The notes below the pieces were generated by a model that searched no databases, was not told the DNA's origin, and worked only from the letters and a program-made list of their open reading frames with translations. This document shows, in pieces, positions 15,344 to 64,000 of a stretch of DNA of 64,000 bases. How positions within the stretch are numbered: the first letter of the stretch is position 1; each line of letters opens with the position of its first letter. The position numbers were made by a program, and so were the translations under genes. This DNA comes from Bispira polyomma. Its lineage: Eukaryota. The stretch spans positions 30,442,001 through 30,506,000 of the forward strand of contig OZ287754.1 of the NCBI GenBank assembly GCA_965649765.1, read 5' to 3'.

Positions 15344-17217
15344 TTATTTAATCACATAGGCTGACAGTTTACTCCTCCACCACTCTCCCCACAGTACAAA
15401 CATCCTGTCTCTGACCGCTAGGACATCTCTTGGCCGCTCCACTCTCCTCAGTCTGTACTGCCTCCATTCACGCTGTGGACTCCTCACCTGGATACGGTGG
15501 TTACTGTAATCACACACAATCAAAGCGTGGCCACTATCTGTACCACTGACTAAAGGTCCACAGAACTGACCTAACTCACTCCCCTCTGTGATACCATACT
15601 CCTTCAGGTACTTCCCCTGTAGAGAGTACTTGTAGATTGCATGTGTCCAGTGGTAACACACATATACAGAGTTAGTGACGGTGCAATGTTTTAAGTGATT
15701 TGTTTGCATCTTTCACGGTAAAGTAAGACAGCTTACTCCACTTGTTCCTGCTCCATTTATATATCTTGATCTCACAATTGTCAAACTCAACAGCCCAAAG
15801 CCTCTCTCTATCGATACAGACATCTGTAAAGTTACCATCAGAGAGTTTATACTGGAGCTGACCCTGGGTATTTAGTGAGTACAAGCCATTACTACAGGCA
15901 GCAATTACCTCATTTTTACTGGTCTGACAAAAAGACCTCACACGTTTCAATGTATTGCAATACATTTGTGTGAGGATGTTTTTACTGGTGTCAAATACCT
16001 CATAATTACCTTTGTCTGATAAACTTGACATCCAGATATTACCATCTACAGTAGCCAGTCTGTATGGATATCCTTGTACATTTTCTGTAGGTACAGATTC
16101 CCCAATCTCTGACATCACCTTATTCATATTCACCCTGAGTGACCTTGTGTTCCGGGGTGTACTAAATACCTTTTTATCCTCAATATAACTTGGATGTTTC
16201 AGAAATCTGTGCCCTTTGCCAATGTCAGGATTCTGTTCAAACACAGGACGTTTTAGCTTTATCTCTGTATGGACACAATGGCTTTTGCTTGTGCACACTG
16301 ATTTGCTCCATCAACCCTCTCAATCCCTTCAGTAAACTATACCCTTTAGCATTACTCAGGGTGGTTTTACAAATGTCAACAATATTCTGTCTCACCACTC
16401 TCTGGGTCTTGTTATTCTCACGAGCCTCTTCTATCACATCCAGACTTGCTTTTTCTTGCTTATCTAGCTTTCCCATAATGCCACTGAACTGCATCTCAAT
16501 AGATGCAATGATGGTATCCTTGTATGTTTGATACTGGGATTTCATATTCTTGAATAATTCTTTTACAACTGGAATTTCTGTCTCCAGACATCTGTCTTCA
16601 TAGTTCAGTTCCTCAATGTCAATCACAACAGATTCCGCTTTTTTATCCACCACAGGTCTCAGTTTCCAAATACGGGATTCGACTGTTTCTGACTTGTGTC
16701 TCTCATGGTCTGTTACTGTACACTTCAGGCAGATAACCCGGTCACAATCTATGCAATACTGGTCTGTTACATGATCAGGGTGGGTCTCACAGTAAAAGTT
16801 AATGTCCAGTGTCGGCTCACCACCACAGTCTCTGTAGGTGTGTGGTCTACTGTTGGGAGTCCTTTTGTGTTTTCTTTGACAGCCTTCACACAGGTTAACC
16901 TTACAGTCTATACACACGACCACAGCATCAGTCTCCTCACTCTCATCACACAGGTGGCAATACTGGCTCTTTGATTTCTTTAACAAAGCATGGAAGTCGA
17001 GGAATTCGTGAAGAACACAGATTTCGATGTATGCCCCTTTTCTAGAAAATAGCCTGCACTGTGGACACAAGATTCCCTCTTTGACATTCTGGAGTAAACA
17101 CTCCTCACAGTAACTGTGGCTACATGGCAGAGTCTTAGGTGAGTTCAGTATATCCAGACATATTGAACACGTCAGGATCCTCTCTATTCCTTGGACTTTA
17201 TGCTCTGATGAGGCCAT
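15344..17217 (-). pseudogene. TRIM/RBCC E3 ligase (RING, B-box1, B-box2, coiled coil, NHL-like beta-propeller; TRIM2/3/56-like), intronless CDS with two frameshifts
   Basis: RING CSICLD...LPCSHSYCEECL...CPQC; B-box1 CHLC...CIDCKVNLCEGC...H; B-box2 CETH...YCIDCDRVICLKC...HERH. Propeller-like repeats in overlapping ORFs 15672-16298 and 15344-15709. Acceptor-like AG just upstream of the ATG; AATAAA at 14975-14980. Could be an intact gene with assembly errors. Confidence 0.85.
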
Positions 17218-17739
17218 GTCTCCTGTGTCAGCTAATGCAATAATGAAATAAAAGTTTAATGACTATCTTAACTTATGTGCCAGTGAAATGTTTGTTTCAA
17301 ATGATATTGCCTTCCTTGTGCACATCTATCTACTTCAACAAACTGATTTATAATGGCCTATCGTGTATCATCTGTTCTTCGTTATGCCCAGGTCCCACAT
17401 AGAAGAGGGTGCTGTGAGCATGACAGGAAATGTTTGAGAATAATCGAGAGTTTAGATTCTACATCATTCTCCATGAAAAGGACTGGACAGTGTTGTTTTT
17501 TATGTGTCAGTGACCATATACCAAGTATTGACGATGCCAAAGCAGACTCCACAACAAGGAACAAATAATACACTTCAATGGATGGCAAGATAAGCGAGGG
17601 GTGGAGGAAGCATGGCAAATAGCCAAAAATGGTTAGGAATTCCCTACATTCAACATCCAAATTCATAAATGTGTAACCAAGGCTTGAAAAACTAGATGAG
17701 GAATGACGACATGTAGGCCAATGTCCGTATGAGGAAGCT

Positions 17740-35426: not shown

Positions 35427-35533
35427 TCAATTAGCCATAACTGCATACAGAACAAACATCATCAGACATAATGCACTCTTCATAGACACTGCTGAGTTGT
35501 CTGGTATCCAAATGCAGGCATTGTCCTCAGCAC
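35427..35533 (-). CDS. Terminal exon with GPI-anchor signal-like tail
   Basis: [35 protein letters not shown]: small residues N-S-A, a short spacer, then a hydrophobic end with no cytoplasmic tail. Confidence 0.75.
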
Positions 35534-38500
35534 CTGCAAAAACAGATAAGACCAACCTCTAAGTGACACATATGACTTTTGTCAGGTTATACATTAACTA
35601 TTTCAGGTATGTTACAATAGCACCTTAAGATAGTACTCTGCCATTTATTTTAAAACCATAGAAATTTTCAAGAAAAAATACCAAGAAATTGACAAGGACC
35701 AAAACGTAAATAAAATGTGTGCATCCCCTGCCAAATCGAAAGTTACTTAAGCATACATGTGGTATCTTTTAGATATACACTAGCCCAAAATAAGGGAAAT
35801 GTTACTTTTAGGGCCACGCTTGTATACAGACTTCTTTTCAGATTATACTATTATTACACAACTTTGCTATTGAAAAATGATTATAAAAGTAGGGGTCAGA
35901 ATGCCTGCATTTCTTTTTTATATCAATACATGTATATATATATTTTTGTGGAAAAATAAAGTGATGAAATATCTATTTACACAGTGCAAGTGTCTACAAC
36001 CATCATTTGCCTTTTATGGATTTTTGAGGTACTTACTCGGTAACCTGATATTTTTTATTTCTTACCACAATTGTATCCACCAGGAACAGCCACTTCACCA
36101 GGCTCACAGACACCAGACTTGACAATGTACACCTCTTCACCTACAGGTTGCAGTAAAAAGGTAAAGTAAGAAACGTTAAAGTAGTTTAATATTCTAGGGC
36201 AAGATTAGAAGGAGCTTTCTCAATCACCATTTTCCAATGGCTTAGGACTGTGCCACTGACACAATCAATTTCTTTTTTAATTCAATCAAAATTACCATGG
36301 TGACAATTTTCATTGTATCCTGGTCAGAAAATAACCAGCTCTAGATCCCATCAATAAGTAGGAAGAAATTACATCAGAGTTGGAGGATTAAGATGTTTGA
36401 AGAAGAATAATTGTCCCAGGAGCTCATGTACTTACTGAGTTCACTGCTATCCTCGGTGTTGTCTATAATCTCTGACATCTGTGCGTTAAAGTTCAAGTAC
36501 TCAAACCGCAGGTCTACACAGGTGTTTGGTGTTACACAACCCCTGGTTATAGACAGTCTGGGGTTAGAGGGGTGAGTATAGTCCTCAGTTGTAGTCAGAC
36601 ACATCCTCTCTTCCTGAAGTAAACACAAGGGTGAATGTAATTAGTAAAATACAGGTGTTCGGTGTTACACAACCCCTGGTTATAGACAGTCTGGGGTTAG
36701 AGGGGTGAGTATAGTCCTCAGTTGTAGTCAGACACATCCTCTCATCCTGAAGTAAACACAAGGGTGAATGTAATTAGTAAAATACAGGTGTTCGGTGTTA
36801 CACAACCCCTGGTTATAGACAGTCTGGGGTTAGAGGGGTGAGTATAGTCCTCAGTTGTAGTCAGACACATCCTCTCTTCCTGAAGTAAACACAAGGGTGA
36901 ATGTAATTAGTAAAATACAGGTGTTCGGTGTTACACAGCCCCTGGTTATAGACAGTCTGGGGTTAGAGGGGTGGGTATAGTCCTCAGTTGTAGTCGGACA
37001 CATCCTCTCTTCCTAAAGTAAGCACAAGGGTGAATGTAATTAGTAAAATACAGGTGTTCGGTGTTACACAACCCCTGGTTATAGACAGTCTAGGGTTAGA
37101 GGGGTGAGTATAGTCCTCAGTTGTAGCCAGACACATCCTCTCTTCCTGAAGTAAACACAAGGGTGAATGTAATTAGTAAAATACAGGTGTTTGGTGTTAC
37201 ATGCTTACACAGCCCCTGGTTAGGGGCAGTCAAGGGGTTACATGGGTGGTTGCAGTCCTTAGTTATAGTGAGATACATTTTCTCTCCCTGAAGTAAACAC
37301 AAGGCTAGAAATGTAATTACACTAGAACCTCTATTATCCAAACTTCCATTACCAAAATATTTAATTTTTTGAACATAGTTGAACCCAAGTTTTCATTTAT
37401 ACTGGTAAACCTCTTCTCTTATAAAGATTCTATTATCCAAACAAAGTCTTGCTCTCCCAAAATGTTCAGATATACACACGCAAAGCACAACAGCAGAATG
37501 AATTAACCAATCAAGAAGTCAAAAAAGCATGGAAGGGTCGTAAGGAAATATGTGGGGGTGAATAGGGATGGAATTAAAGGGGGTGATAAATGAGTTTAAA
37601 GAGATGGGTTTAAAGCGCTTTTCCTAAACCCAGAAAGTGTTTCAAGTGATTTAAGCTCAAATGGGACATATAACTGTAATTCAATCATTTCTATAGCGCC
37701 CTATATATTCCGTAAGGTACTTGCTCTACAAAAGATATTGCCCTACAACATAATCTAGGTTATAATCAGTCAGACAATGGTGTGTTCATGTCTTTTTATT
37801 GTATTGTATTTTGCAAGGCATCCTCTAAAGTGCAACAACAGAATCAATTAACCAATCGAGAAGTCGGAAAAACATAACCAAGGTTATAAGAAAGGATCTG
37901 GTGGTGTGTAAGGGGGAGTGGGGGGGGGACTAAAGGAGTAAGTGAGTTTGAAGAGATAGGTTTTAAGTTGTTTCTTAAACCAAGAATGTGTTTCTAGTGA
38001 TTTGAGCTTAACTAAGAGACTATTTCATAACATACGGGCATCGATTGAGAAAGCTCTAGCTTCAGCCTTTTTGGTGAGTTTAACAGATAAAACAGAAAGC
38101 CTGTATTAAGGTTACTAACTTAAGCGAAAGACAAGTAGCAAAGTAGGGGGCTAATGAGAGACAACACCTTTGAAAGTCGTGACATGGAAACAGAGTTTGA
38201 TAATGAATGGGTACGGGTGCTGATATGAAAAGTGACTCTAGATAGATAGTTTTGAATGGGCTGTACATTATTAATTTAAAACTTTTTTACATCAAATAAA
38301 AGGGTATTGCAGAAGTCAAGGCAGTTACATATAAAGGAATTAACCAAAGTAATAGCAGTATCCAGTGACAAGTGTTTTATGATTATTTTGATACCATAAA
38401 TTTGGTAGTAACAGGAGCAACATATGTTGCTGATGTGCATATCAAGTGAGAAAGCAAAGTCAATAGTAGCATTAAGGTTCTTGATTTTATTAGAAGATTT

Positions 38501-41500
38501 TATGTCTTAAGTGTTTGTTCTAACCAATGAGAATCAATTCATTTTTGCCAGGATTTAATTTTAATTTGAAATAATTCATCCAAGCCTGTACTGAGGAGAG
38601 ACAGTTTTTTAGACCACAATTTTTGTGGGCATTGTCAGAGTTAAGAGAAAATAGATTTAAGTTTGATCGCGTGTGTGTAGAGATTTACCATTACCGCTCT
38701 CCTGGAAAAACCTTATTACACCTAGTCTCCTGAAATTTACAGGAAACGTTCTTTATTACAAAAGCTTGCCTAACAGTCATCTTGGCCTCATTTTAAAAAA
38801 CAAGATGGCCACCACGGGTATTTCTTTGAAAATAATTAGGCTTTTAGCTGTGTCTGTTTCTCAGCAGTAGAAGGTTGAATCTCTTCACAGGTGATATGTT
38901 AACGAATATATATTTCCTGTATAAGCATGCAGACATTTGACCTTGAATCTCCTAACTGAAGGCCATCGACAGAGTTGCAAAGTACCCCAAGTGACCGATT
39001 TTGGCCAAACTTAAAAGTGCCTATATCTTGCCTAATATTGGTTTTAGAGGTTTGAGATCTAAAACCAACCTGTAGGAATTCATGGGCTGGTAATCTTTTT
39101 CTGTGGTCAGATTTGACCTTGGACCCATTGTGCAAGGTCAAATGGGTAGGCCAAACTTTAAGGTGCCTATATCACACTTATTATTGGTCCCACAAATTGG
39201 CAATGTGAAACCCACTTTTACCATTCAAGGCTTTAGCATAAATGCTCTATAGGAAATCATAGGCTTCTAGCTTGGGTGCTAGCTGAGGTGCTCGCTACCT
39301 AGGGTGCTTTGTTTTTCTGGTAGATACAAATATGCTAAGTCTAGTTTGAAGTTGCCAGAAGTATACAGAATGTACATCAGTATAGATCCCATATACAGCA
39401 ATAACCGAGCAGTGACAGATTTTGAAATTTGAAATTTAATAAAAGAAACATGTGTATTAAATTTGTTGTTTTTTTACTGAGAAAAAAAAGGATTAAATTA
39501 TAAAAATCCATCCAGAAATTAAAACGTTATGGTAAAAAAAACTAACACCAAAAATTTTAAGCATTATTACACAATTATATATTGAAATATACTTTATCTT
39601 TGTGTAACAGTAAATTAGTAGAAGATAATTAAGTACTTTACCTGGTTGTCACATGTCTGCCAGCAGCCATTTTGTTCACAGTCTTCCATACTCTCAGCAC
39701 CTTCACAGTTCCAGCACTGAAACATCTTATCCTCACACACACAGTCCAGGAAGTCACACGCTTGTAATAGGAAGGGTCCTGTGTGAATTAATTGACTTTA
39801 GTTAGTTTGGGTACAACATCGCTTTCAATATATCATGTGTCATATCACAGGGGCAATTAATACTCGTGAAAGAAAATCAGAGCAGCATAGTTGGACAAGG
39901 TTTTCTGCTCCGCAAAGGATCAAGCTTTAGCAACTATTGCCAATTTACTTATGTACATGTCAGGGCCAAAATTCGAACCCATGGCTGCAGGGGTTGGAGG
40001 CTAGTGTGTTACCACCACATAAACAAGTAAACACCACAAAACCTTGTCAACTGTTTACTAGTGTAAAAGAGCAATTACTGCAGCCTATAACATGAAGTTA
40101 TCAGCTGTTACTATTTGGAAAAAAAGTAATCATCACAGGACCTTGTCAACTGTTTACTATTTTCAATAAGTAATCACTACAGGATGTTTAGTTATCAAAT
40201 TTATACTATTTTAAAACAATAACCACAGACTTATACTTTAACTTATCATATTGATGGAATAAACACCCCAGTTGCATTTCAGGACAAATATACTGTAACA
40301 TCCTCTTTTCATGTTAACACAGTATACATAGTGTACAGTGACTTGGTCTCATCAAATGTAAATTAATCTCTCAGTTGTTTACCACATAATCAAACTCTTG
40401 ACTATTTTTACATGTACACTATAATCCCATTGTTACACCTAATTACCCTCTGTTTATAGTCCAGGACTTACTTCCCCTACACCTTCCCTCTCCAGTAGGT
40501 CTGATACAGTCTCTCACATACTTCTTCACGTTGTCCCCACAGTCACAACCTCCGTCCACCAGATACCAGGAGCCATAGTAGTTAGCTGACAAAATATACA
40601 CCAGAGGCCATATTATCAAATATTCTTAAAATGCAATTCTTAGTATTTTCGAAGGCACAGCCAATCAGCTTGTTTCAGTCAATCAAATTGGTTGAAGTAA
40701 AAATCTAAAATCAGGAATACTAGGGGCGATATGTATCACAGTACCCAGCTCAGTGAGAAGTCACAGATAGGTAAGCTCATGTACCCTCAAGACATAACAC
40801 AGTATGAGGGATCAAATTGGATTTACGTGTTAATAAAAGTATATATTTACTTGGTTTTTAGAATAACTACTTTTTATCTACAGTTTGGGGTCAGTGTAAA
40901 CTAGTTAAGGTGACCAGATTAAGTTTCTACCTAAATACACTAGTCGCCATTGCAATAATATTAACTTAAGGTGACCCTAAATTAAGGCGAGTTCAATTTT
41001 TAAGAATTTACATGCAATTTAAGTTAAGGTTACTAGCTCTACTGAGGTAACCTTAATTACAATTAAGCTTATGTAAAACATATAATGCATTAAAAGAGTA
41101 TAGTTACAGAACATATAAATGCAGTAAAATAAGATTAGTCACTGATGAAAGATAAGATCAGAATAATGAAAACCAGCCAAGGGGCTATATGAATCAAAGG
41201 TCTGAAATAGCTAAACTAGACACTGTTTTACTCAAATGTCCTTATCTACAGGATTAGGTTCTAGTTTATGACTAATTTCTAAATGGGGAGTCAGAAAATT
41301 GCTCCTGGATATAGATAATTTTTAACTTATACTGAATCTAGTTTCCGAGTCTAATGTAACAGTTGATATAAAGTTAGAAATGTAAATTTTACTTAAATTA
41401 CACTTACCTGGAATCTGCCACATGTTAACAAAGTAAACTGATTAAAATAAAGTGAAATACAATACAAGTTTAGATTTGTTAGATATACTAATAGGGGTTT

Positions 41501-44500
41501 ACCTCCTGAAGGAGGGCCTATGATTTCAGGTGCTTCAGTGTCCACAATGTGAAGCTGCATGTAGTCATGTAAAGCAGCATCGTAGCACTCTGGCATCTCT
41601 GCCACGTCAACTAATAGAAATACACAGAGTGAACATGTAATTGGCTGTCGTATAGGGGTCGTGATGGCCTAGTGGTTTGAAGTGCCTGCTTCTGAATCAC
41701 TGGTCTCTCACCAATGTGGGTACTAATCCTGTAATTTCTTTCATGTGGGGCAAGTTTGTTAGGTACTTTATAAAGTGCTTTAGCACTGGTTTCTTCGACC
41801 ATTGAACCAGGCCATCGTCATATGACCTAAGCTATTTCAAGCGATTTAAAACCCAACTAAATGAAAATTCTTTAATCATTGATTTACTCAAAACTCCCAT
41901 AACTTACAGTTGATCCTATTTAAGTTGAACCTCCAGGCACCAGGTGGTGGAGATTTACAGAGTTCTATTCTGAACTAGAAATTTTAAATCATGTTGGGAC
42001 CGGAAAATTGGTTCCATTTATACAGAAGTTCAACTTATACTGGCTGGTACTAGTTACAGAATCTGCTGTACATAAATTCACCCTAAATTAAGCATAGTAT
42101 TACTTACGCAATATTCATGTTACCTTATTCCAAAACACCTCAAATGTCCCCTATTATCAAATGCCTTCTTTATCTAACTCCCGCTCATCTTCCTCAATTA
42201 CTGACCCCTTTTTCTCATTTTTTAATTCATGCTTCAGGATTATTGTTTTTCTTAGGACTATTTCTTTAAATGCTCTTTTAAGGAAGATGTTGCACCTGCA
42301 AAGACCAATAATACTGTGGTCAATTGCAAGCCATCATCCCAAAAGCTGTGACTTTTAAATTAGTGACTGTACTTGGACAGTCAAAAAAAGAAAAGGGTCA
42401 ATTAGCACTATGAATATCAGATAAAGGCAGATAAATTTGAATAGGAATGCATAACAATAACTATTTAACGGGTGTTTTTTGCTACCTAGACAAGGATCGT
42501 AGGGCAGTATACAGGCTGTACAGTCAAAGTTCCCATCAGGACAAGTCAGTGAGTTGTGGTTGACACAGTCAGCTGCTTCCATACACCGAGTTCTGTAATG
42601 TCCTTCTACACCGTCAACTGACAGACTGACCTCACATACAGGCTTAAAACACAAAGAGGTTACAGGTGTACATATAATGTACAGCTAAAGAGTATAGAGT
42701 ATGCAGTATACAGGTAAGGTAGATAAACAGGAGAAACAGGTGTAAATGCAATGTATAGATACAGTATACAGGTAAGGTAGATAAACAGGAGAAACAGGTG
42801 TAAATGCAATGTACAGATACAGTATACAGGTAAGGTAGATAAACAGGAGAAACAGGTGTAAATGCAATGTACAGATACAGTATACAGGTAAGGTAGATAA
42901 ACAGGAGAAACAGGTGTAAATGCAATGTACAGATACAGTATATACAGGTAAGATGGACAAACATTAGTAAATGTAAGTGTTGGTTCATAATATGATAAAA
43001 TGTATTGACCTTTGTCACCAGGACTTTCATCACAGTTTTTGCAAGGGTAACATTGCCACCACTCTGGATAAACTTATGGATGTATAATTGATTTGGGGTA
43101 AACTGGTTGACCAAAGTTAATTGTTTTGTATAGTAGGAGGTGTATTGTAAATGATTCTGAACCTAACAGGTAACCAATGAAGTTTCTTTAAGTGGGGACT
43201 AATTTGGAGCAAAATGAGGAATCTTAGTAACTGTATATATGTTGGTAACTTTGACCAACTACCCTTAGAGTGAGGTTAAACTAGAAATAAATGTAAAATG
43301 TCAGGTGTGTTTAACATACAAAGTCAAAGCCATCACAGGACTCCAGTCTAGACCCCTCCATGGTGAGAGCATTGTAGATACATTCCCCTCTGCTGTCTAC
43401 TGCACAAGTCACATTGGACACATAGCAGTACTTCCCGGGTTCTTGTTCACAAGTGGGTTGACTTTGTAGATACACATAGGTAGGAACTACAGAAAACAAT
43501 TGCAACAAGGGTTTTTTTAGGTATAGTTTGTGTCAAACTAGAAAACAAATATCCTAGTTTCAATCTTATTGTACGATTAACCCTTTCGAACCAGAGGAAA
43601 TAATATCCTGTGAACTGCAAGAAATTGTAGGGTAACAGATTACAGATCTGTAACAGATTACAGAGTTGTCAGAGTCGTGTTACACACACAACAACATTTC
43701 TTAACAAGCATTCAGTGACTAATGAACACATATCTTTTAAGCAATATATCAAACCCACAGAAAGTAAATGATAATACAATCTCCGGGCACATTTTATAAA
43801 TGTCAAGCATAATACTGTAATAAAAATCATGAATGGAAGTAGGCGGAGCTTATGCTGGTGTGACGTGAGCAATATTGGCGTCTGCATAGTTTTTTTCTAG
43901 CGATGCAGTTGACTCGGCCCCCGAATCCTCCCCAAATCCTTCACCTGAAGTAATCGACCAAAAATTAAAGAAAATAAAAGTCCCCGGCCAAAATAATGGT
44001 TATATTCAAAATTTTGTCCCAAAACTCACTAGGGAAATTGGTGAAAATGCTGTTCTAAAGCTCGAATTCCAGAAACAACAAAACTGAGAAGCTATTTTTT
44101 ATGTTACTTCCTAAATGCTAAAAAAAAGAATAAAAACCTTGCATGTGTTGATGTAAACAGGTGGCATCTGATTTATTTAAAACTTTAAAAATAAAAAGCT
44201 TTAAGAATAAATAATTCTGTCAAAATGTATTAATTTTCCTAGAAGAAAGTGTGCAGTTTCTTCACTGAATATATACATTGTACTGAATACTGAACAAAGA
44301 TACTAGATGAGTTTAGATTTTGTAAAAACTACAGATCAATACTCACTGCACTCCTCTTGACCTGAAAACACAAAGTATACACAGTCAAAGATATATCTAT
44401 ATATATGACAACAGCTGCACAACTACATACAAATCTAAATACATGTTTATAACTCAGTCCTACCGGTCTTTACGCTGGATGTCGTAGGGTTTGGTGGTCT

Positions 44501-53500: not shown

Positions 53501-56500
53501 TATGTAAAACGTGCACTTGAAAGCAAAAGAGAAATTAAAATTTAAATTTTGTTAAAGATGGACTGAAATGCAAACGAAAATTTAATTTTTTTGTGTGTGT
53601 GTTTTTAAGACAAGAATTAAAAATAGCAGCAAAAGCAAAATGTCTATATTTTAGGAGCTTTGACTATACATACTGTCTCCACAGAGAGCTCCCTCATAAT
53701 CTGTCCCAGTACAGTCGCAGGTGAATGTCCTAACCCCATCTATACAGACACCGTTTGTACACGGGGAATCAGCACAGTTGTCTATTTCTAGAACACAATA
53801 CAATAGTTTATAACAACTAGATAACAGGAGGCTAGAAATGTAATGGTAGTTGTATTAATGAAAAATATAACTATTTCTAGAATATAACACAACAGTTTAT
53901 AAGAACTAGAATTTGCCAATATCACAAACCGGGCATATTTCTGTGAAAAATATCACAAACAGGACATATTTCTGCAAAGGATATCAGAAACAGGACATAC
54001 TCCTGTGTATGATATAAGAAACAGGACATATTTATGTGAATTATATCAGAAACAGGATATTGCTGCAAAAGGTATCAGAAACAGAGCACATTTCTGCGAA
54101 ATATATCAGAAACATTGCATATTTTTGGCGAAGGATATCAGAAGTAGGGCATATTTCTAGGTTTACAGAACGGTCCCAAAATCAACTTGATGAAGGTATC
54201 TGCAGTAGTTTTTTTTTTTTCAAATATAGGTAAACTTGTCACTAAAGTAAACTCAGCAGGTGCCAGTCTGACAAAGTCATCATTACTTCACTTTTTCCCT
54301 GTCCTCTTAGTGAAGAACAGTGAAGACCTATTTTTGATGTGCTGAACAATTTGATGTTCAACGTATGGAGATTTTACTGTTTTACTAGGTGTTTTACACA
54401 AAATTTGACCATTGCTCAAAATACATGTTCGTCGGTGATGTACATCCCACCACTTTAGAATTACAAGTTAAACACTGAAAACTATAATTGTTCTGTATCT
54501 TCAAGCCCTACTTTGGTCACTGGTTTTGATACTGGTGCATTATACAGCTCCTAGTGAACACCTCTTTATAGTAAACAATTTACCTTGGCTCCTATAAGTG
54601 TTCACAATATAGAGGTTTTACTGTTATATTCAATCCTTACTTTGGTCACAGATGTCGCCGCTGTAGTCTACCTGGGAACAGTCACAAGTGTAGGAGTCTA
54701 TACCGTCCACACACACACCATTTGTACAGGGAGAACTGGCACAGTCATCTACAATGTGGCCAACATTGCAAATTTTTATAACTTTGGTAGTGTGTTATGC
54801 CATTTACAAAGATTGATAGACAGTCCGTAATACAACTTGGAAATTGTAATATAGTAGAATGTCAGTTACCTAAATCCATCTTCTATTTTACAAACATTCT
54901 ATTATTGGAACAGAGTCTTGCTCTGCCAACATGTTCAGATAATAGAGGTTGTACTGTACAATCTAATGATATAGTATGCCGGCTATCACATTTTCAATTA
55001 CTCTTTTTTATATTGACAAGTAACTCTTGTCTTGAATTAGAAAAATAACTAGTATAAATTGAGAAATAGTGTGATAGAATGCAATAATATCAGAAACTAG
55101 AGAAAATTTTACACAAATACTGATAGTCTTGAACAATTTACAGTAGTGATAAATCATTGCTGCTATGAAAGATTTCAACATTTAAACCATTGATGATCTT
55201 TATGTAACATCATCCTTCACTCAATTCAGACACTACTATTAGCACAATGTTATTGAAAACACTGTTAACAGACACAATCTATCATAAGGTTAATTCTCAT
55301 GCAGATGGATGAGCCAATAGAATTTCTTTCATACACTATTAAATTGTTTTGTGAATACTAAGTGCTTTCACGTGGCCTACTGGTTAGGGAGTTGGGCTGG
55401 TGATGAGAAGGTCCCGGGTTCGACTCCTGGTACTGGCTGCTAGTTTTATTGGTCGGATAACATCATTTGACAAGATGTGTACAGGCATTTACTTAGTGTC
55501 TTGGATAAACACTCACAATGGAAGTCCTGTGTCACTGGGTCCTATTTCCAGTGGCAGGCTAAAGATCCTTGGGTATGTTGATAAATGGTCATCCTCAAGC
55601 CTCTCTCTTCAGTTTGGGGAATGACAGTAACGGATACAGTATACTGTTACAGTCAGGAAAGGATTAATTAGCTTAATAATTAGCGTTATACCATATCAAG
55701 GTAGCTATATGCACTGATTATAAATACGAATACAAACAAATACAAATCCCCAGCTGTGAAGACATACCAGATCCGTCTTCAGTAGAACAGGTACTGGATT
55801 CGTATTCACACCTCTTGGTTCTGTCATCCCAAACCAGATTTGCTGCAGAACACTGTCTGTTGTCATAGAAGATTCCTCCTCCACAGCTAGCATACACATT
55901 ACATCCTTGACAAGATTGGTAATCACCATCTGGGATGTTAGAGCAATCACTGATACATTCCCCTGAAATGCACAAATCTGTCCTTACATCTTCCATTACA
56001 TAAAGATGAAAGCACACCATTCAATAAATACTAAGATTAGCCATGGCTATGCCCTTATTCAAAAATGTAAATGCTGGTATGTAATCACCTCTAAGTGAGG
56101 ACTTAGTCGACACCACTTTTACAGCTGTTACTAAGATTTCTTTGTGTCTATCTATGTAAGAATAATGTAAAAATGTGCATTTGTTTTATAATCTGATGTC
56201 GCCCCTAAAATTTCAGGCATAGTTTTAAAAAACCAAGCTATTTTTAATGATGTTAATTATTGAAATCAGTTAGATTACGTACCTACAATCACATTGTTAC
56301 AGTTATTAGTTGTACAGCAATAGTAGCAAATAGATCCAGACACATCGTGACCTGTACATTGGGACTCCTGTAAACAGAAAACCAATAGTTTACAGTAAAC
56401 AGGTACCACTTCTAATTATCATATACAAAAATGGCTTGAAAATAGATGTATGATTGTCTTATAATAATGGTGATATCAATGCAAGGACAACTGACTCTGC

Positions 56501-59500
56501 CAAATGACCTAAATATGTTCAAACATATACATGGTCGAAAAATAACTTACACTCACAGAAAATACCAAAGGACATAAGATGAACAATTTTCAAACATTAT
56601 AAGATGAACGTGTGAACTGATATTTAAGCACAACACAAGTTATCTCAATGCACACTATGTAATGCTAAATCTCCAGCATGAAGGTGATCTCAATGCTGTT
56701 AAAGCATGTTTAGTCTTTTCTTTTTTCTATTAGGTCTTAAATATTAGATGCATTTGATACATCAGTATCATCTTTAACACTCATAGATGCAAGTTACTTC
56801 AGGAACTTATTTAAATATGACAACTTTACAAATCTGTAAATCATCTTACCCCTCAACCAGGTTGTGTTAAAGAGCAACCGGTAAATCAAACAAGTCATAT
56901 AACAAGTATATTGATCATTTAGATTCTGCTCTTCAAGCTATTTACACTCTATAAACCACTTATAAACTAAAAACCACAGACTACTTACATACTGAGTTAC
57001 TTCACTGGTACAGATAGATTCAGACTTGCATCCTTTAGTGATGGACATTCGGCCGTCACCATGACTACGTACTACTGTCTGACATCCGCCCTGTATAATG
57101 AGTGCTAAGCATTTATTGTAATATATAGTACATGTACACCAGTGTATGATCAGTCTGCCTTGGCTGGTAGAAAACCCCAGCCTACAAGTTGGAAACATAA
57201 AGAACAATGCAAATTGGAGCCAGAATCAATAATACAATAAAAGCTGTAGAATGCAATATATTTGTAAATTGTGCTGTGAAAATACAGGGTTGGTGAAGCA
57301 GTTGTCATTGGAAAAATAAAATGTTTAACAGTTAAATCAAAAACGGTTTTCAAATATACCATTTTCACTAGATCCTGGCCAAAACCTAATCAGTGTTAGA
57401 TCACATGGGAGTACACATGTGAAAATCTGTCAAAAGGTTTGGCCTGTATGACCGAAAAGTAAGGCAAAAGCAGTTGCAAAGATGACAATTTTAACAGGAT
57501 GTCAACAAAACTTCGGCAGTTGTAGATCTCATAGTGATATACATTCCCTCAAATTGGTGAAAAACTGGTACATATATTCATTGAAAGGGTCCAGTGGTAC
57601 AACACCATGGTCTGAATTGATTTTGACCTTTGAATATGCAGCTTAACCTCAAACGTTTGAAACAAACGTGTATATATGTAACATTACAGCATAATGACCT
57701 TTGACTCAGATTTGAAAACTTGTATGATCTCTTGTATAGCTCAGCATCTACTGGTTACATGATTTTATCAATATTCATTGCGCGGTGTAGATACGCTGTA
57801 TAATAACATCACCTCTGTTTGACTTTTAACCTTGGAGTTATGACCTTGACTTTAAATATTATCTGCACTACATCGCAAAGAGAACTTGTTGCAAGAAGTC
57901 ATTTATTGTTACAGCTATTCATTTGGGGATGCATGTATTTCTGCTTCAGTGATTTACAGTAGGCTTCTATTCCATCCTCTTGCCTATTGGGATGGGGCTG
58001 CGGTGGCCTAGTGGTTAGCAAGCATTGCGCTTCACAATCCCTGGTTTCTCACCTCTGGGTGGCGTGAGTTTGACTACCGTCGATGCCTGGGAAAGGTGGT
58101 AGTTCCTTATTGTGGGCCGCTGGTTTTAGTGCAGAACCTTAATCAACTGTATGCAGTGTTTCCTCCAGCGTTTCCAACTACCCGTCCCAATATAACCTAA
58201 ACAGGTACTAGAGTGGACTTTAAATATACCAATTCAAATTCAAATTCTTGCCTATTGGGTTTTGTCATCTGTCATATTATTTCATTTATTTGTAGTGTAT
58301 CTTAGGCGCTGCCAGTAAAATGTAATCCACAATGCCCATGTCCAAGCTTGTCATTATTCCAATTGTACTAATGCAGAGAACTTACATTGGAGTACCAAGA
58401 TAATGAAGATAAGTCAATATACAATGTTTAACTCTTCAAATCAATAAATATTTCACTTAGTATTCAAATTAGGATAAATAAATCAGCACTATTTTTACTG
58501 AAAACCAGAATAGAAATTAGCACTATTTGTACTGGAAACCACATACCACCGCAAGTACTTAGCAAACTTTCTGATGCATAAGAAGCATTGCGAGTTGAAC
58601 CTAGTCTCCTTAGGGAGGCTAGTAATGTTGAAGCAGACGCTTATAACAGCTTAGAAGACATATTACAAAAGCTTACAAGCTAATCTAGGTGACAGCCAAT
58701 AACTTAAGCAAGATCAAAAGTAATCTGTGCATTCATAAGATAAAAAAATGTCTAAATACTTTCACCATGGAGGTGCTGTTTCCGTGGTTCTGTTAATTGG
58801 CTGGTTAGCTTGTCTCAAGTACTACACAAAAACTATTAAACCGATTCACATGAAATTTGGTTAATGGACATAGACCCATACATAAGTCAGTAAATTTTGG
58901 AGTACATCTGAATATCAGGCAAGGTCCTAGATTTGCTTTTTCTTTAGAAACTCTGGTGCCTTGATTGAGGTATGCTCTCTATTAAGTGTCCTTCTAATTT
59001 GAAAAGCATTGGTAATATTGCTCAACAATCAGTATGTAACCATTAAAATTTTGAAATAATAAAGGAATTTCTGAATGGAGTAAATCATCTGCAGATATCT
59101 TGCCAATTGTAGTGTTAATATTTATAAACATATCTGACTTAAAAACCTCATCAGAAAAATTTTGGGGATGGAAAATTGATTCGTCACTGATTCATCAGCA
59201 AGCTTTGTGATTACTGGAGAACCATTTTGAGACAACTACTATCACTAGTACTCACTGTATCTCCTGCTGAGCATGTCTGTTGATGACCATTTTGCCTACA
59301 GAGGGAGTCACTCTCTTGACTGTTACAGCTCCAACACTGGTGGGCTGCCCCATCTTATTAACATAAATTAAGAGACATTTGTGTTCATTTGTGCATTGGC
59401 CTAATGGTTTTAGAATCATTCATTTCACAATTACTTTCCTTTCACTGCTGAGGACAGGAATGTCAATCCCACTACTTCTCTTGTGTGGCAAAGTTTGCCA

Positions 59501-62500
59501 GTTACTTGTCTTATGCCCTATTAACATATACAAGGTATGGTAGGCAGCACAAAAAGGAAGGCTAAAGGTGACAACATACAGAGTACTATCCTTTCTGCTG
59601 GCCATAAGCCTTACAATAAATATAAGCTCAGACCAAGAGGCTGCCTTTGCCTTGGCAGCTTTGCAGTGTTAAATGATGTTTCCACAGTAACATAACATTC
59701 ACTACAGGGTTTGTGAGACTGTGAACATGTTAATGAACAATGTGATTACATAAAGAACTAAATATTATTGTTGCATATTGACACAATATTGACACAAAAG
59801 TAGAAGTAAAAGATGGCAGGTTTTTTTTTGCCAAGAAAAGTGCCTATATTTTAGGAACTTGCACTATACATACTGTTTTCACACAGAGTTCCCTCATAAT
59901 CCTCATAATTCACAGGTAAATGTCCTAACCCCGATTAAGGAAAACATTGTAAACCAATATTATTATTTTGATTTAGTTAGCTTCACAGAAAAAAATTCTG
60001 CTGAGTATCAAATAAATAACTCTTGTTTTAAATAGAAAAATTATGTTGCTGATTGAGAATTAATACAAGAAAGTAAACAAAAATCATACAAATACTGATG
60101 GTCTAGAACAATTAGGAATTGTATCAAAAGACAATAATATTGCTGTTATTAGAGATGTAGGCATCAAGAACACAATAGTCTAACACATGGGCCACAGCAG
60201 CAGATGACCATATTAGACATGTAGGGTGACACACTAGCTTATAAACTCATAGAGCTAGGGTTCAATCCCAGCCTGGGACTACCAGGTACAGGAAAATAGT
60301 AGTTCAAAAGCATCACAATTGATGCCATATATATATACCATATTGGTCTTCCAAATTTTGTTGCCCAAGTGTGCCATATAACCGGTAAATCTTAGTCGAA
60401 ACCTACCTGGTATATTCTTATTACACAAGTCAGTAGTACAGCAGTCATAGCAAATAGCACCTACTTCATCATATCCAGTACACTGAGATGCCTGGAAAAT
60501 AGAAAGAGGACAACAAAGACCCCAAATATAGCTTTAGTTTAGTTTGGGTTTAATCTCGCTTTCAATATGATTGATCATGACAGACAGTTTAGTGAAGGAA
60601 TAAATCAGAAAAAGGTAATTGGTCAAGGTTTTTATTATGGCTCTTAAATATTGCACAGAAAGTATGTATAACATGGGGGAGTGTACAGGTGAACACCAGT
60701 TGTCTGATTTTCTATTATCTAAATATTTGATTTCATGAGCTCATTGTTGTTGTCCTAAACATATTCCTATGGCACAAAAGTGCACAATCTATTATCTTCC
60801 TATGTCCCCCACAAAAGTGCACATTCTATTATCTCTTATGTCCACCACAAAAGTGCACATTCTATTATCTCCTATGTCTCTCACAAAAGTGCTTGGTGTT
60901 CTAATACTTGGCACGTGGTTGTTGTAATTTGGTATAAAAGTTTTGATACAAGTCCACTTTAAAACAAAATATTCAAGATAATGAATGTTGGTCTAATTGT
61001 ACTAATTTATAATATTAAGTACGGTTTTACTGTAAATACTTAAAAGCATCCTGACTTACATACTGCTGTTCTTCACTCTCACACACACTCTGGGCCTTAC
61101 ATCTTTTTGTGATGGTCTTGTAATGTTGGTACACCCTGACCTCAGTTTGACATCCACCCTAAAACACAAAATAACAACTTATAATCCTTGCTGTACTGTG
61201 TTACGAAAATATAGGATTGGGCCACTTTAGAGATGAATTAATATGGTGGGAGGAAGGCAAAGTCTAAATACAAACAAGACAGTTTAGCTCATTAGAGATC
61301 TTACAAGTAATGAGTAATCATAAAGTCTTCAGTAATCAAGAACTATATCAATAAATAATATGATTACTTATCAGTGATGATAATATATTAAAACTATAAT
61401 CAGGTATATGTACACATCATCATATTGCATAGATTATTGCTCCATAATGCTCTTAGTTTTATATAACAAATATGCTGTTATATATGCATGTATGCAAATT
61501 AGTCTTGAATCTGTTTAAATGGGCACAAGCTAAATCTTATCACCCAATGACTTAGTGCAGGTTTGCTACCAGCCACTTCACATACATGTTGTATGTACAG
61601 GAGTTTTCAGTCCTAGTTTAAATGGTCACATGACACATATTATTATCTAATCACTTACACTATCTCCTTGCTTACATGTTTGCTTCTGACCACTGCTTAC
61701 ATATATGTTGTATGTATAACAGTTTTGAATTATGTTTTAATGGTAACATGACACATATTGTCACCTGATCACTTACTGTGTCTCCTTGGTTACAGGTTTG
61801 CTCCCAGCCACTGCTCACACACATAGCTTCATCATTAGCATTAGTACACGCCCAGCACACTGAGGCAGGACTGCCACCTGGTGGGTAAATAGAGAAAACA
61901 TGTGCGGCTTGGGAATTTTTGATGTAACTCTCGTGTCAGGGGGAGAACAGGTTGAAATACTATAAAACTTTAGAATCACTACTTACACTTCCAAGGTCGA
62001 ATTAGAACTATCTGTATAAAATCAGTACTGTAGTATTAGAGATTTTAATATAAACATACTGTAACTTACGTTTACCTTTAATTTTTTGAAAATTTCCAAT
62101 TATTTGTCACAAAACTTATTAAATATTGTACACCAGCTTGTTGATTTTAAATTTGCATTTGAAATAGGTGTATTAAACAGTTAAATTAAATATGCACTTA
62201 AAAGCAAAACATAAATTTAATTTAATTTTTTTGTGTTTAGACCAAAAGTAAAAAGCAAGAAAAGCAATACGTTTTTCAGTATTCTGTTTTGTAAAGTTTG
62301 TACATTTTAGGGGTGTAACAGGTAAAATAAATGGGTTCGAACACCCATACAGGGAATCTCAGCCGGACTTCCATTAACTCTTGCTGTTAGTATTTACCAA
62401 TAAGAAGCATTATTATCAACAATATGATATCTATGATATCCTATGAAATATTTGGTGCTATTTCTGAAACTTTAAATTCACGAAGACGGCCTAGTGTTTG

Positions 62501-63346
62501 TAAATATGTCAGTCATTAGTGTACATTGAACCCTGTGAGTACTCAAAGTCAGGCCAACTTTGACTGCAAGAGGACATGCGCCCATTTTACAGGTTAAATT
62601 AGATGTAAAATAATAGGATGAGTTAAGTTACAATGAGATAATGACAATAAAACATCAGGTGGCAGGTTCTACTCTAGCAGAATACTTACTTGGTGCTTCA
62701 GTAGTTGTACTAGTTGTATCTTCTGCATCTAGAAAAAAGCCGCACAGAAGCAATAAGATAGGAGTTATGGTTATATACATTGTTCACTGACCAGTGATAA
62801 ATAATGAAGAAAGTATTCATTGTTTATTATTGTGCTATTTTTGAAAGCAGTTTTCTAAACCACCCTTACCTCACCATCTCATTTATCTGTTAATACCTCC
62901 CTAAACAAGACATTTGAATGAAATTGATTTGGGTCCATATGTGCTAATGGCTGCTGGGTAATACCGTTCCCTCTGTGTCAGGCAGGTAATTGAGTAGGCG
63001 TCTACCTTGTCTTGACTTTCTAGTCCTACTCTTGACTACTTGCCACAAGGAGTTCATATTCTTGCAAATATAACTCCAGTGCTTTATTGACAAAATGTCT
63101 TAAGCTTAATATTTTGAATTTGGCTGTATATGTTAAGATTTTGGTCTTACTACTTAATACTTAAAGAATAGAACAGATGTTTTGTTGAAAGATCACAAAG
63201 TAGGCCCCAGTGTTGTTCTAAATTATTATACCCGAGTGTGACAAATTACTGGGAGTCCTACCTGGTAAATTCTTGTTACACAAGTCAGTGGTACAACAAT
63301 CATAGCAAATGGCACCCACTTCATCGTATCCAGTACACTGAGATGC
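35427..63346 (-). CDS. Large mosaic cell-surface protein, predicted GPI-anchored (Ly6/uPAR-like modules, CBM14, 12 Ca-EGF, TSP1-like); 3' 33 exons, 5' end outside the window
   Basis: Exons in transcription order: 63346-63262, 62728-62690, 61877-61777, 61158-61060, 60491-60407, 59353-59256, 57090-56989, 56367-56283, 55962-55768, 54748-54641, 53787-53674, 53331-53231, 52613-52515, 51476-51392, 50877-50770, 49058-48945, 48851-48738, 48633-48520, 48425-48312, 48217-48104, 48009-47896, 47802-47689, 47595-47482, 45072-44959, 44361-44347, 43486-43320, 42642-42486, 41610-41503, 40585-40472, 39778-39642, 36613-36436, 36140-36066, 35533-35427. All introns are GT-AG with matching phases; total 3588 nt, no internal stop found; AATAAA at 35259-35264. 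Confidence 0.85.
36436..39778 (-). CDS. Membrane-proximal divergent LU-like module (exons 39778-39642 and 36613-36436)
   Basis: [27 protein letters not shown] / [32 protein letters not shown] parallels the upstream CWxC...C...QTC / C.T...ITKxC...C modules. Confidence 0.7.
36520..37320 (-). repeat. 133-bp tandem array, each unit carrying a branch point, acceptor and the 5' part of a coding exon
   Basis: Exon-start copies at 36613, 36746, 36879, 37012, 37145 and a diverged one at 37287. Confidence 0.95.
37480..38655 (-). mobile_element. Degenerate LINE fragments (RT C-terminus and 3' UTRs) in an intron
   Basis: [14 protein letters not shown] and LDFCNTL on the minus strand; 3' end resembles 20880-20940. 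A further 3' fragment lies at ~49830-50030. Confidence 0.7.
40472..40585 (-). CDS. Exon with a thrombospondin type-1-like motif
   Basis: [35 protein letters not shown], continuing [13 protein letters not shown] in the next exon. Confidence 0.55.
41655..41860 (+). mobile_element. Degenerate SINE related to family A
   Basis: ggggtcgtgatggcctagtggttt...gaatcactggtctctcacc head. Confidence 0.65.
42704..42952. repeat. 58-bp intronic minisatellite, ~4.3 copies
   Basis: cagtatacaggtaaggtagataaacaggagaaacaggtgtaaatgcaatgtacagata at 42704, 42762, 42820 and 42878. Confidence 0.95.
45331..47214. repeat. Apparently perfect 942-bp tandem duplication in an intron
   Basis: Units 45331-46272 and 46273-47214; I found no differences by eye. 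Each contains a degenerate SINE and a truncated EGF exon. Confidence 0.95.
47482..49058 (-). CDS. Array of eight tandem 114-bp Ca-binding-type EGF exons (period 207-218 bp)
   Basis: Consensus xID(D/N)[13 protein letters not shown](G/E)[15 protein letters not shown](A/T)LC(E/G)x; each exon has an AG acceptor and a GTATGT donor, phase 1-1. Confidence 0.93.
51392..53331 (-). CDS. Three-exon Ly6/uPAR-like (three-finger) module, copy A
   Basis: [28 protein letters not shown] / [33 protein letters not shown] / [24 protein letters not shown]; ends in the CCxxDxCN hallmark. Confidence 0.88.
51531..51747. mobile_element. Tourist/Harbinger-like MITE
   Basis: TIRs gggggcaaatatacctggccgattttg / caaaatcggccaggtttattcacccc, flanked by TCA and TTA. 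Absent from the paralogous introns at ~60535 and ~63405. Confidence 0.88.
51990..52260. repeat. ~36-bp intronic minisatellite (cacaaaagtgcaccttctattatcttgctatgtttct); paralogous arrays at 60772-60892 and 63643-64000
   Basis: Tandem units visible at the same intron position in three duplicated modules. Confidence 0.9.
53918..54160. repeat. Degenerate ~30-bp minisatellite (atatcagaaacaggacatatttctg)
   Basis: About 8 diverged units. Confidence 0.8.
55372..55650 (+). mobile_element. tRNA-derived SINE (family C); relatives at ~46010-46205 and ~46952-47147
   Basis: gtggcctactggtt and gggttcgactcc boxes; shared 3' end atggtcatcct.aagcc...gggaatgacagt. Confidence 0.65.
55768..55962 (-). CDS. Single-exon chitin-binding type-2 (CBM14/peritrophin-A-like) domain
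   Basis: [58 protein letters not shown]; phase 1-1. Confidence 0.88.
56283..59353 (-). CDS. Three-exon Ly6/uPAR-like module, diverged copy B
   Basis: [28 protein letters not shown] / [34 protein letters not shown] / [24 protein letters not shown]. Confidence 0.85.
57992..58245 (+). mobile_element. tRNA-derived SINE (family A), full length
   Basis: Homologous to the 26437 and 33594 copies; 14-bp TSD tcttgcctattggg at 57978-57991 and 58246-58259. Confidence 0.92.
59862..59932 (-). pseudogene. Dead EGF exon remnant (3' half with donor)
   Basis: ctatacatactgttttcacacagagttccctcataat...cacaggtaaatgtcctaacccc matches the array exons but is internally deleted and lacks the acceptor. Confidence 0.75.
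60407..61877 (-). CDS. Three-exon Ly6/uPAR-like module, copy C (recent duplicate of copy A); the last exon of a further copy is at 63346-63262
   Basis: Exons are near-identical to 53331-51392 and the introns align colinearly. Confidence 0.88.
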
Positions 63347-64000
63347 CTGGGAAAATAGAAAGAGGACACAATAGCTGGATCAACAAAGACCCCAAATATA
63401 GCTTTAGTTTAGTTTAGGTTTAATATCACTTTCAACATGATTGTGTCATATTACAACAGACAGTTCAGGAGGAAAATAGAAAAAGGTAGTTGGTCAAGGT
63501 TTTTAATATGGCTCTTGAATATTGCACAGAAAGTAGTCATAACATGTGGGAGTGTACAGGTGTATACCAGTTATCCGATTTCCTCTTACCTAAATATTTG
63601 ATTTCATGAACGTATTATTGTTGTCCTTAACATATCACTATTGCACAAAAGTGTACCTTCTATAATCTTGCTGTGTCTCCCACAAGAGTGCACCTTCTAT
63701 TATCTTGCTATGTCTCTCACAAGAGTGCACCTTCCATTATCTTGCTATGTCTCTCACGAAAGTGGCCCTTCTATTATTTTGCTGTGTCTCCCACAAAAGT
63801 GCACCTTTTTTTTGTTGCTATGTCCCCCACAAGAGCTCGCCTTTCATTATCTTGTTATGTCTCTTACAAGAGTGCACATTCTATTATCATCCTATGTCCC
63901 CCACAAAAGTGCACATTCTATTATCTCTTATGTCCCCCACAAAAGTGCACATTCTATTATCTTCCTATGTCCCCCACAAAGGTGCACATTCTATCATCTC

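What the first reader, a model, noticed from the sequence alone, without database searches (positions are those of the whole stretch)
35427..64000. Large predicted GPI-anchored mosaic surface protein built from LU, chitin-binding, EGF and TSP1-like cassettes
Seen: 33 phase-compatible exons give at least 1195 aa in the order LU(end)-Thr linker-LU-LU-CBM14-EGF-EGF-LU-EGFx10-divergent Cys-rich/LU-like-linker-TSP1-like-LU-like-hydrophobic tail. Established: CCxxxxCN three-finger folds, CBM14 and Ca-EGF are extracellular modules, and phase 1-1 modules shuffle freely. Inference: I do not recognise this architecture as a named family. Chitin-binding and three-finger heads on an EGF stalk suggest a lineage-specific pattern-recognition, cuticle/chaeta or gut-matrix tethering protein. 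The ORF track shows only fragments of it.
Basis: partly seen in the sequence, partly recalled or inferred. Interest (0 to 1): 0.8.

Follow-up and report, generated by a model that had tools for sequence, protein, structure and literature searches.

The report
Annelid three-finger, chitin-binding surface tether
A worm gene stitches three-finger, chitin-binding and EGF modules into one large lipid-anchored cell-surface protein that is intact and under selection; the combination is missing from a recent survey of three-finger proteins and probably ties a chitin layer to the cells beneath it, though nothing here shows expression or binding.

Summary
The gene runs on 15.7 kb past the window to a signal-peptide exon. 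The whole model is 48 exons and 1751 aa: six 12-Cys LU domains, three CBM14, sixteen EGF, two degenerate LU-like modules, a doubtful TSP1-like module and a GPI-type tail. Duplicated exons show dN/dS about 0.18 (p = 3e-15), so it was translated and constrained. CBM14 and EGF pass Pfam cut-offs. LU rests on cysteine spacing plus weak, concordant PDB hits. TSP1 and calcium-binding EGF are only partly met. The host is probably an annelid. A 2026 survey of 387 invertebrate genomes lists no LU-CBM14 or LU-EGF fusion, and this genome seems to have two or three more such mosaics. Best reading: a GPI-anchored tether holding the animal's own chitin matrix (about 45%). Pattern recognition is less likely because the repeats are homogenised, not diversified. 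The CBM14s lack a proline important for chitin binding. There is no RNA evidence. The scan noted the 5' half on the adjacent window (s1-663153). New variant of a known kind.

The parts
63347..64000 (-). Intron that runs out of the window. The gene continues beyond 64000 with 15 upstream exons (extended coordinates = G000:C7 position minus 30442000): signal-peptide exon 79713-79650 (phase 1 end); two cassettes LU(3 exons)-CBM14-EGF-EGF (76367-70774 and 70259-65429); first two exons of the next LU (65113-65013, 64368-64270)
63262..63346 (-). Third exon of an LU domain (CCxxxxCN end), phase 0-1
62690..62728 (-). Thr-rich linker exon, phase 1-1
   Evidence: strong splice sites
60407..61877 (-). 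LU domain type a, exons 61877-61777, 61158-61060, 60491-60407 (phases 1-0-0-1), 12 Cys
   Evidence: last exon's only PDB match is LYPD1 C-terminus, E=1.5; Pfam CD59 E=0.021
56283..59353 (-). LU domain type b, exons 59353-59256, 57090-56989, 56367-56283, 12 Cys
   Evidence: first-exon profile's only PDB match is PSCA N-terminus, E=0.17
55768..55962 (-). CBM14 (peritrophin-A) exon, 8 Cys, phase 1-1; lacks the usual Pro after the sixth Cys
   Evidence: Pfam PF01607 23.2 bits over cut-off 22.1
53674..54748 (-). Two EGF exons (54748-54641, 53787-53674), phase 1-1
   Evidence: Pfam PF00008 over cut-off
51392..53331 (-). LU domain type a, exons 53331-53231, 52613-52515, 51476-51392
44959..50877 (-). 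Ten-EGF stalk: 50877-50770; eight 114-nt exons in a 208-nt tandem array 49058-47482; 45072-44959 (7 Cys)
45331..47214 (-). 942-bp identical tandem duplication holding two truncated EGF exons (47186-47151, 46244-46209); left out of the model
   Evidence: contig depth about twice that of flanking unique contigs in three runs
44347..44361 (-).
42486..43486 (-). Degenerate LU-like module, exons 43486-43320 and 42642-42486 (phases 1-0, 0-1); core Cys spacing 7-16-5 as in the LUs, but no CC pair
   Evidence: spacing matches; exon profiles not significant; single copy in genome
41408..41610 (-). Acidic linker exon 41610-41503 and optional 30-nt exon 41437-41408
39739..40585 (-). Six-Cys TSP1-like module (exon 40585-40472 plus the start of exon 39778-39642); Trp ladder and RxR motif not intact
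   Evidence: spacing; no Pfam or PDB TSP1 match
36066..39778 (-). Membrane-proximal divergent LU: rest of exon 39778-39642, exon 36613-36436, exon 36140-36066; long acidic third loop, no CCxxxxCN
   Evidence: LU exon-1 profile 28.1 bits, 0/500 shuffles; exon-2 profile 5/500
36614..37319 (-). Five 133-nt duplicates of acceptor plus exon start ('mirages') in front of exon 36613; read-through from any of them hits a stop
   Evidence: PMC3087553
35427..35533 (-). Last exon: omega-site candidate Asn-Ser-Ala 22 residues from the end, polar spacer, hydrophobic tail, stop; AATAAA at about 35264
   Evidence: rule-based, no GPI predictor run

Best explanation
One intact gene for a secreted, GPI-anchored, very acidic, disulfide-rich surface glycoprotein of about 1750 aa, built by intron-mediated duplication of phase 1-1 cassettes. 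Most likely job: a matrix tether on the apical face of a chitin-secreting epithelium (gut peritrophic membrane, chaetal follicle or tube/cuticle-forming cells). The GPI anchor holds it in the outer leaflet. The ten-EGF stalk lifts the head region clear of the membrane (about 25-30 nm, from my own knowledge of EGF size). Three CBM14 domains bind the animal's own chitin fibrils by avidity. The LU domains bind matrix proteins or chitin-organising partners, and cleavage of the anchor could release the layer. Shown: exon chain, module order, purifying selection, CBM14 and EGF identity. Well supported: LU fold, signal peptide, GPI signal. Inferred: expression, tissue, chitin binding, partners.
For: Open 48-exon frame from a hydrophobic N-terminus to a hydrophobic C-terminus with no other hydrophobic segment, and no second signal-peptide or tail exon in 183 kb. 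dN/dS about 0.18 among copies, so the heads are kept identical, as expected for a multivalent binder of an invariant ligand. CBM14 over the Pfam cut-off, with the Leu and terminal aromatic of the binding loop kept (PMC5459812). Annelid peritrophic matrices contain chitin (PMC6109156). Annelid tube proteomes are enriched in ChtBD2 and TSP1 domains, and EGF-domain proteins are expanded in tubeworms (PMC8476170). An LU protein, Retroactive, is needed for chitin organisation in insects (PMC3561106). The host carries erythrocruorin linker genes and gave no molluscan haemocyanin match, so an annelid is likely.
Against: No RNA or protein evidence. All three CBM14s lack the proline equivalent to CHIT1 Pro451, a high-impact residue for chitin binding, though relatives in three or more foreign contigs share this variant. 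Nothing points to a tissue. The GPI signal is rule-based, and Tribolium Retroactive, also predicted GPI, was not released by PI-PLC (PMC3561106).
Confidence: 0.45

Rival explanations
1. Mucosal immune recogniser working like Ciona/amphioxus VCBP: CBM14 anchors it on chitin (self membrane or fungal wall) while the LU domains bind microbes or hand them to a signalling co-receptor.
For: VCBP-C joins recognition domains to a CBM14 and binds gut chitin and bacteria (PMC6109156). LU proteins act in recognition and immunity (PMC13719153). Exon hits suggest several differently shuffled sister genes.
Against: The head repeats are nearly identical at protein level (pN 0-0.03), with no sign of diversifying selection. 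No close paralogue array: the 3' exons are single-copy. No cytoplasmic tail.
Confidence: 0.22
2. A general adhesion or receptor-modulating surface protein (gamete, neuronal or epithelial) whose CBM14 modules no longer bind chitin and serve as protein- or glycan-binding spacers, like multi-LU GPI proteins of vertebrates.
For: Proline loss in the CBM14 binding loop. LU domains outnumber CBM14 by six or eight to three. Synonymous divergence among some exon copies is lower than intron divergence (0.035-0.077 vs about 0.14), which fits concerted evolution as in repeat-built gamete-recognition proteins (my own knowledge).
Against: The CBM14 keeps all cysteines, the Leu and both aromatics and passes the Pfam cut-off. 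It is conserved across three copies.
Confidence: 0.2
3. The locus is not one constitutive transcript: it is heavily alternatively spliced (variable stalk and head number, perhaps secreted short forms), or recently decaying because duplicated splice sites derail splicing.
For: Every module is phase 1-1 and can be skipped. Nineteen decoy acceptors, most scoring as high as the true ones, all lead to stops. Two truncated EGF exons and a degenerate EGF remnant at 59932-59868. An exon candidate at 44508 would give a stop after the last EGF.
Against: No stop or frameshift in any of 48 model exons, and strong purifying selection. In amphioxus such 'mirages' did not disturb normal splicing by RT-PCR (PMC3087553). 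Alternative splicing would change length but not the kind of protein.
Confidence: 0.13

Closest known systems
Ly6/uPAR (LU, three-finger) proteins, multi-LU GPI-anchored class
   Same: Signal peptide, repeated three-finger domains ending CCxxxxCN, C-terminal GPI-type signal.
   Different: LU domains have 12 Cys and three exons each, and alternate with CBM14 and EGF. The 2026 survey (PMC13719153; 387 genomes, 5 annelids) reports LU fused to kinase, 7TM, Kunitz, C1q, fibrinogen, Ig, MAM, thioredoxin and permease domains but not CBM14 or EGF, and lists annelids as LU-only or receptor kinases.
Insect Retroactive (Rtv)
   Same: Membrane-anchored three-finger protein tied to chitin-matrix organisation (PMC3561106).
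   Different: Rtv is a single 150-aa LU with no CBM14 or EGF; homology beyond the fold was not shown.
VCBPs of Ciona and amphioxus
   Same: Recognition-type domains joined to CBM14; gut chitin membrane (PMC6109156).
   Different: VCBPs use Ig V domains, one C-terminal CBM14, and are secreted; here LU domains, three internal CBM14, an EGF stalk and an anchor.
Peritrophins and lophotrochozoan ChtBD2 matrix proteins (tube and shell matrix)
   Same: Multiple CBM14 of the same sub-type, which foreign contigs show in tandem arrays and fused to unrelated domains.
   Different: No LU exon was found near CBM14 in 39 foreign contigs (mostly short); those proteins are not known to carry LU domains or a long EGF stalk with GPI anchor.
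Notch/fibrillin-type tandem EGF arrays
   Same: Phase 1-1 EGF exons with the beta-hydroxylation consensus.
   Different: The first calcium ligand is Lys in most repeats; no TM or intracellular domain.

Membership tests
LU/three-finger domain (six main modules) | 8-10 conserved Cys in LU spacing, C-x2-C at the start | tested here: met
   C-2-C-8-C-8-C-7-C-16/17-C-5-C-10-C-9-C-2-C-0-C-4-C, 12 Cys; reading two as an extra loop-III pair is my inference
LU/three-finger domain (six main modules) | C-terminal CCxxxxCN | tested here: met
   all third exons
LU/three-finger domain (six main modules) | Profile match to clan CL0117 or a three-finger structure | tested here: inconclusive
   Exon-wise only: CD59 E=0.021, LYPD1 E=1.5, PSCA E=0.17. 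Each PDB hit was the sole hit and an LU protein at the right position. The joined domain was not searched or folded.
LU domain (module 43486-42486) | LU Cys spacing and CCxxxxCN | tested here: not met
   core 7-16-5 spacing and intron phase match, CC and CN absent, exon profiles not significant; LU-like only
LU domain (module 39778-36066) | LU Cys spacing and CCxxxxCN | tested here: inconclusive
   first two thirds match (0/500 and 5/500 shuffles), end motif absent
CBM14 / peritrophin-A | Pfam PF01607 gathering score; six-Cys pattern | tested here: met
   23.2 vs 22.1 bits; profile match to a solved CBM14, E=1.9e-5
CBM14 / peritrophin-A | Binding-loop residues (CHIT1 Pro451, Leu454, Trp465) | tested here: inconclusive
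   Leu kept, Tyr at the Trp position, Pro absent
CBM14 / peritrophin-A | Binds chitin | not testable with these tools
   needs a binding assay
EGF-like domain | Pfam PF00008 gathering score; six Cys | tested here: met
   24.9-26.9 vs 21.5 bits
Calcium-binding EGF | D/N-x-D/N-E/Q before Cys1 plus D/N and Y/F between Cys3 and Cys4 | tested here: inconclusive
   hydroxylation consensus in all 16; K-I-D-D/N-C in eleven repeats lacks the first acidic ligand; no EGF_CA hit
Thrombospondin type 1 repeat | WxxW ladder, CSxTCG, RxRxC, six Cys | tested here: not met
   six Cys in plausible spacing but only one Trp in the exon and no RxR motif; no Pfam or PDB TSP1 match; TSP1-like at most
GPI-anchored proteins | Signal peptide; small omega, omega+1, omega+2; polar spacer; hydrophobic C-terminus without cytosolic tail | tested here: met
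   hydropathy peaks only at both ends; omega candidates 22-23 residues from the end; rule-based
GPI-anchored proteins | Release by PI-PLC | not testable with these tools
   experiment
VCBP | Two Ig V domains plus C-terminal CBM14 | tested here: not met
   no Ig domain in any exon scanned

The most novel reading that the evidence does not exclude
The founding member of an undescribed annelid family in which three-finger domains are fused to chitin-binding domains on a GPI-anchored, length-variable EGF stalk. It would be the physical link between epithelial membrane and the chitinous gut lining or chaeta, with stalk length and valency tuned by cassette duplication and exon skipping. This would give the first direct LU-CBM14 coupling, echoing the insect Retroactive/Knickkopf system in one polypeptide.
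Probability: 0.25. Interest if true: 0.7.

Novelty: new variant of a known kind. Interest (0 to 1): 0.45.

Why it matters
How annelids attach and shed chitin structures (peritrophic membrane, chaetae, tube lining) is poorly known at protein level, and invertebrate three-finger proteins have almost no assigned functions (PMC13719153). This gene offers a concrete, testable candidate and adds an LU architecture missing from the current catalogue. It is also a clean record of exon-cassette shuffling in progress. Against that, lineage-specific mosaics of common extracellular modules are ordinary in lophotrochozoans, and no function is shown.

Tried and rejected
RNA support: no RNA run holds the locus. 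Full-library HMMER search with an LU exon-2 profile gave two hits, both low-complexity repeat proteins, not LU. A 34-column exon profile is insensitive, so this blank is no evidence of absence. Word search with the CBM14 exon gave two unnamed fragments, whose contigs hold CBM14 only. A word search with the neighbouring TRIM gene did not identify the taxon. ESM Atlas: nothing for exon 36613, generic CBM14 for the CBM exon. Metagenome scan: 37 CBM14 loci, no LU exon nearby. AlphaFold on the CBM exon gave pLDDT 51 and 47, so no fold search was run. Exon candidate 44508-44464 was rejected (stop at the junction, poor acceptor), and so was the 44572 acceptor (TGA at the junction). A candidate near 44786 lies in a high-copy repeat. 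Two genes in tandem: no internal signal-peptide or tail exon. Assembly artefact for the 942-bp duplicate: depth about double, though these runs may be the assembly's own source. Thionin, Kunitz/BPTI and RING matches to 3' or LU exons are chance Cys matches.

Full report
Observation. The gene lies on the minus strand. I placed every exon by its AG/GT ends and phase. The window is G000:C7:30442001-30506000 of a 1.035-Gb assembly. Upstream DNA adds 15 exons: a 64-nt hydrophobic signal-peptide exon ending in phase 1 (extended coordinates 79713-79650), two cassettes of LU-CBM14-EGF-EGF, and the first two exons of the LU that the window cuts. The full model is 48 exons over 44.3 kb and 1751 aa (1761 with an optional 30-nt exon), 13% Cys, with 289 Asp+Glu against 89 Lys+Arg. 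It is hydrophobic only at its two ends. Order: SP-[LU-CBM14-EGF-EGF]x2-LU-Thr linker-LU-LU-CBM14-EGF-EGF-LU-EGFx10-LU-like-acidic linker-TSP1-like-LU-like-GPI signal.

Is it a real gene? Among duplicated exons, distinct variant codons number 52 synonymous to 37 non-synonymous (ratio of rates 0.18, binomial p = 3.5e-15). Exons are 93-99% identical while their intron flanks are 57-89%. The single-copy 3' exons cannot be tested that way. They are GC-rich (0.46-0.51 vs 0.34), and the four most Cys-rich have no look-alike among about 500-600 intronic AG..GT windows each. Some have weak acceptor scores on a matrix trained on the repeats, and the 15-nt and 30-nt micro-exons are unproven. No second signal or tail exon occurs in 183 kb, and AATAAA follows about 165 nt after the stop. 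No RNA run exists for this organism in the index. Splicing and expression are therefore predictions.

Domains. CBM14 and three EGF exons pass Pfam gathering scores. The six main LU modules each use three exons (phases 1-0-0-1) and have 12 Cys ending CCxxxxCN. Searched exon by exon, the sole PDB match of the first-exon profile is PSCA and that of a third exon is LYPD1, both LU proteins matched at the right position, with weak E-values; Pfam gives CD59 at E=0.021. The membrane-proximal module starts as a true LU (0/500 shuffles) but lacks the end motif. The module after the stalk shares only core spacing and intron phase. The TSP1-like module has six Cys but no Trp ladder and no Pfam or PDB support. 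All 16 EGFs carry the hydroxylation consensus, but eleven begin K-I-D-D/N-C, so one calcium ligand is missing. The C-terminus fits the GPI rule (Asn-Ser-Ala, 22 residues from the end). Whole-domain LU profiles, GPI predictors and architecture searches are therefore left out.

A caveat on chitin binding. In human CHIT1, Pro451, Leu454 and Trp465 are high-impact binding residues (PMC5459812). The three CBM14 copies keep the Leu and have Tyr at the Trp position. They replace the Pro with Ser or Ala plus a one-residue insertion. Most foreign relatives keep the Pro; a few share the Pro-less form. Binding may be weaker or altered.

How it was built. Cassettes were duplicated with their introns (alignable intron DNA differs by about 14%). 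Eight EGF exons sit in a 208-nt tandem array. Debris remains: an EGF 3' remnant at 59932-59868, and two truncated EGF exons in a 942-bp identical duplication. The contig depth there is about double in three runs (possibly the assembly's own data). Three introns carry tandem copies of acceptor plus exon start (10, 4 and 5 decoys), most as strong as the true site and all running into stops. These are the 'mirages' described in amphioxus, where RT-PCR suggested normal splicing (PMC3087553; I took the term from note s1-576399).

Host and relatives. The genome has erythrocruorin linker matches over the Pfam cut-off and no molluscan haemocyanin match (control silent). An annelid is likely; linker genes also occur in some other phyla (my own knowledge). 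Exon hits elsewhere in the genome, by coordinates only: on C2, LU exon 1 (106435787, weak), LU exon 2 (106438322), CBM14 (106439754) and LU exon 1 (106441007) lie in order on one strand. On C14 two CBM14 exons (64-70% identical) precede a weak LU exon-1 hit. On C9 LU exons lie 11 kb before an EGF hit. C1 has LU exons. The 3' exons are single-copy. I could not fetch these loci. Outside the genome, this CBM14 sub-type is a promiscuous module, and no LU exon was found beside it in 39 mostly short contigs. The large profile search with an LU exon returned only two spurious repeats. These blanks are weak.

Comparison with the known. A 2026 survey of 387 invertebrate genomes, five of them annelids, lists the unusual LU fusions it found. 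CBM14 and EGF are not among them, and annelids are entered as LU-only or receptor kinases (PMC13719153). Its Pfam-based search could miss divergent LUs like these, and its supplement was not available. Paper searches for the combination found nothing. Functional precedents are insect Retroactive, a three-finger protein needed for chitin organisation (PMC3561106), VCBP with recognition domains plus CBM14 on the gut chitin membrane (PMC6109156), and ChtBD2/TSP1/EGF proteins of tubeworm tubes (PMC8476170). It is a member of none of these.

Mechanism. I favour an anchored tether for the animal's own chitin matrix (0.45): identical multivalent heads, a spacer, an anchor and no signalling tail. Immune recognition (0.22) fits the VCBP precedent but not the lack of diversification. 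A chitin-independent adhesion or modulator role (0.2) fits the lost proline. A variable or decaying transcript (0.13) fits the decoy sites but not the intact, selected frame.

Verdict. A real and intact gene, larger than reported, with an architecture I could not find described, made entirely of known modules by a known process, and with no functional evidence. New variant of a known kind; interest 0.45.

Noticed in passing
window 36614-37319; extended 68160-68397 and 74052-74761 (L007, L008): Three arrays of duplicated splice acceptor plus exon start ('mirages'; 5, 4 and 10 decoys), most scoring as high as the true acceptor, all leading to stops. Duplicated exon ends plus donors also follow the LU type-a first exons (118-nt repeats at 61580-61824 and 53032-53278).
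   Followed up: partly
LU type-b and CBM14 exon copies (59353-55768 vs extended 76367-67483): Synonymous divergence between exon copies (0.035-0.077) is well below substitution divergence of the paired introns (about 0.14): possible exon-limited gene conversion; small numbers.
   Followed up: partly
window 45331-47214: 942-bp 100% identical tandem duplication with two EGF exons cut after the second Cys, each still flanked by AG and GT (36 nt, phase 1-1); contig depth about double.
   Followed up: partly
window 59868-59932: Degenerate 3' half of an EGF exon with its donor, left in an intron: trace of the cassette duplication.
   Followed up: partly
window 44464-44572 (-): GC-rich stretch with a strong acceptor and several donors that fits no phase of the model; joined after the last EGF it gives a stop, so it could make a secreted short form.
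   Followed up: partly
window 16240-17262 (-): Single-ORF TRIM-like gene (RING plus two B-boxes, Pfam over cut-off), 18 kb downstream; only one distant homologue in the word search.
   Followed up: partly
G000:C2:106435787-106441096 (+); C14:10817346-10830401 (-); C9:41501477-41514013 (+); C1:58511157-58512318 (+); C2:76.26-76.32 Mb (-); C11:42.37-42.46 Mb (+): Further loci with LU-type exons, some beside CBM14 or EGF exons: probable sister mosaics and multi-LU genes.
   Followed up: no
G000:C7:48557639-48568253: Erythrocruorin (giant haemoglobin) linker gene matches on both strands, about 10 kb apart.
   Followed up: no
L045:56-2305 (+), L048:44-2470 (+): Foreign contigs with the same CBM14 sub-type fused to an acid-sphingomyelinase-like phosphoesterase and to FG-GAP repeats.
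   Followed up: no
extended 77660-78529 (L008): LINE reverse-transcriptase fragment in the first intron, between the signal-peptide exon and the first LU exon.
   Followed up: no
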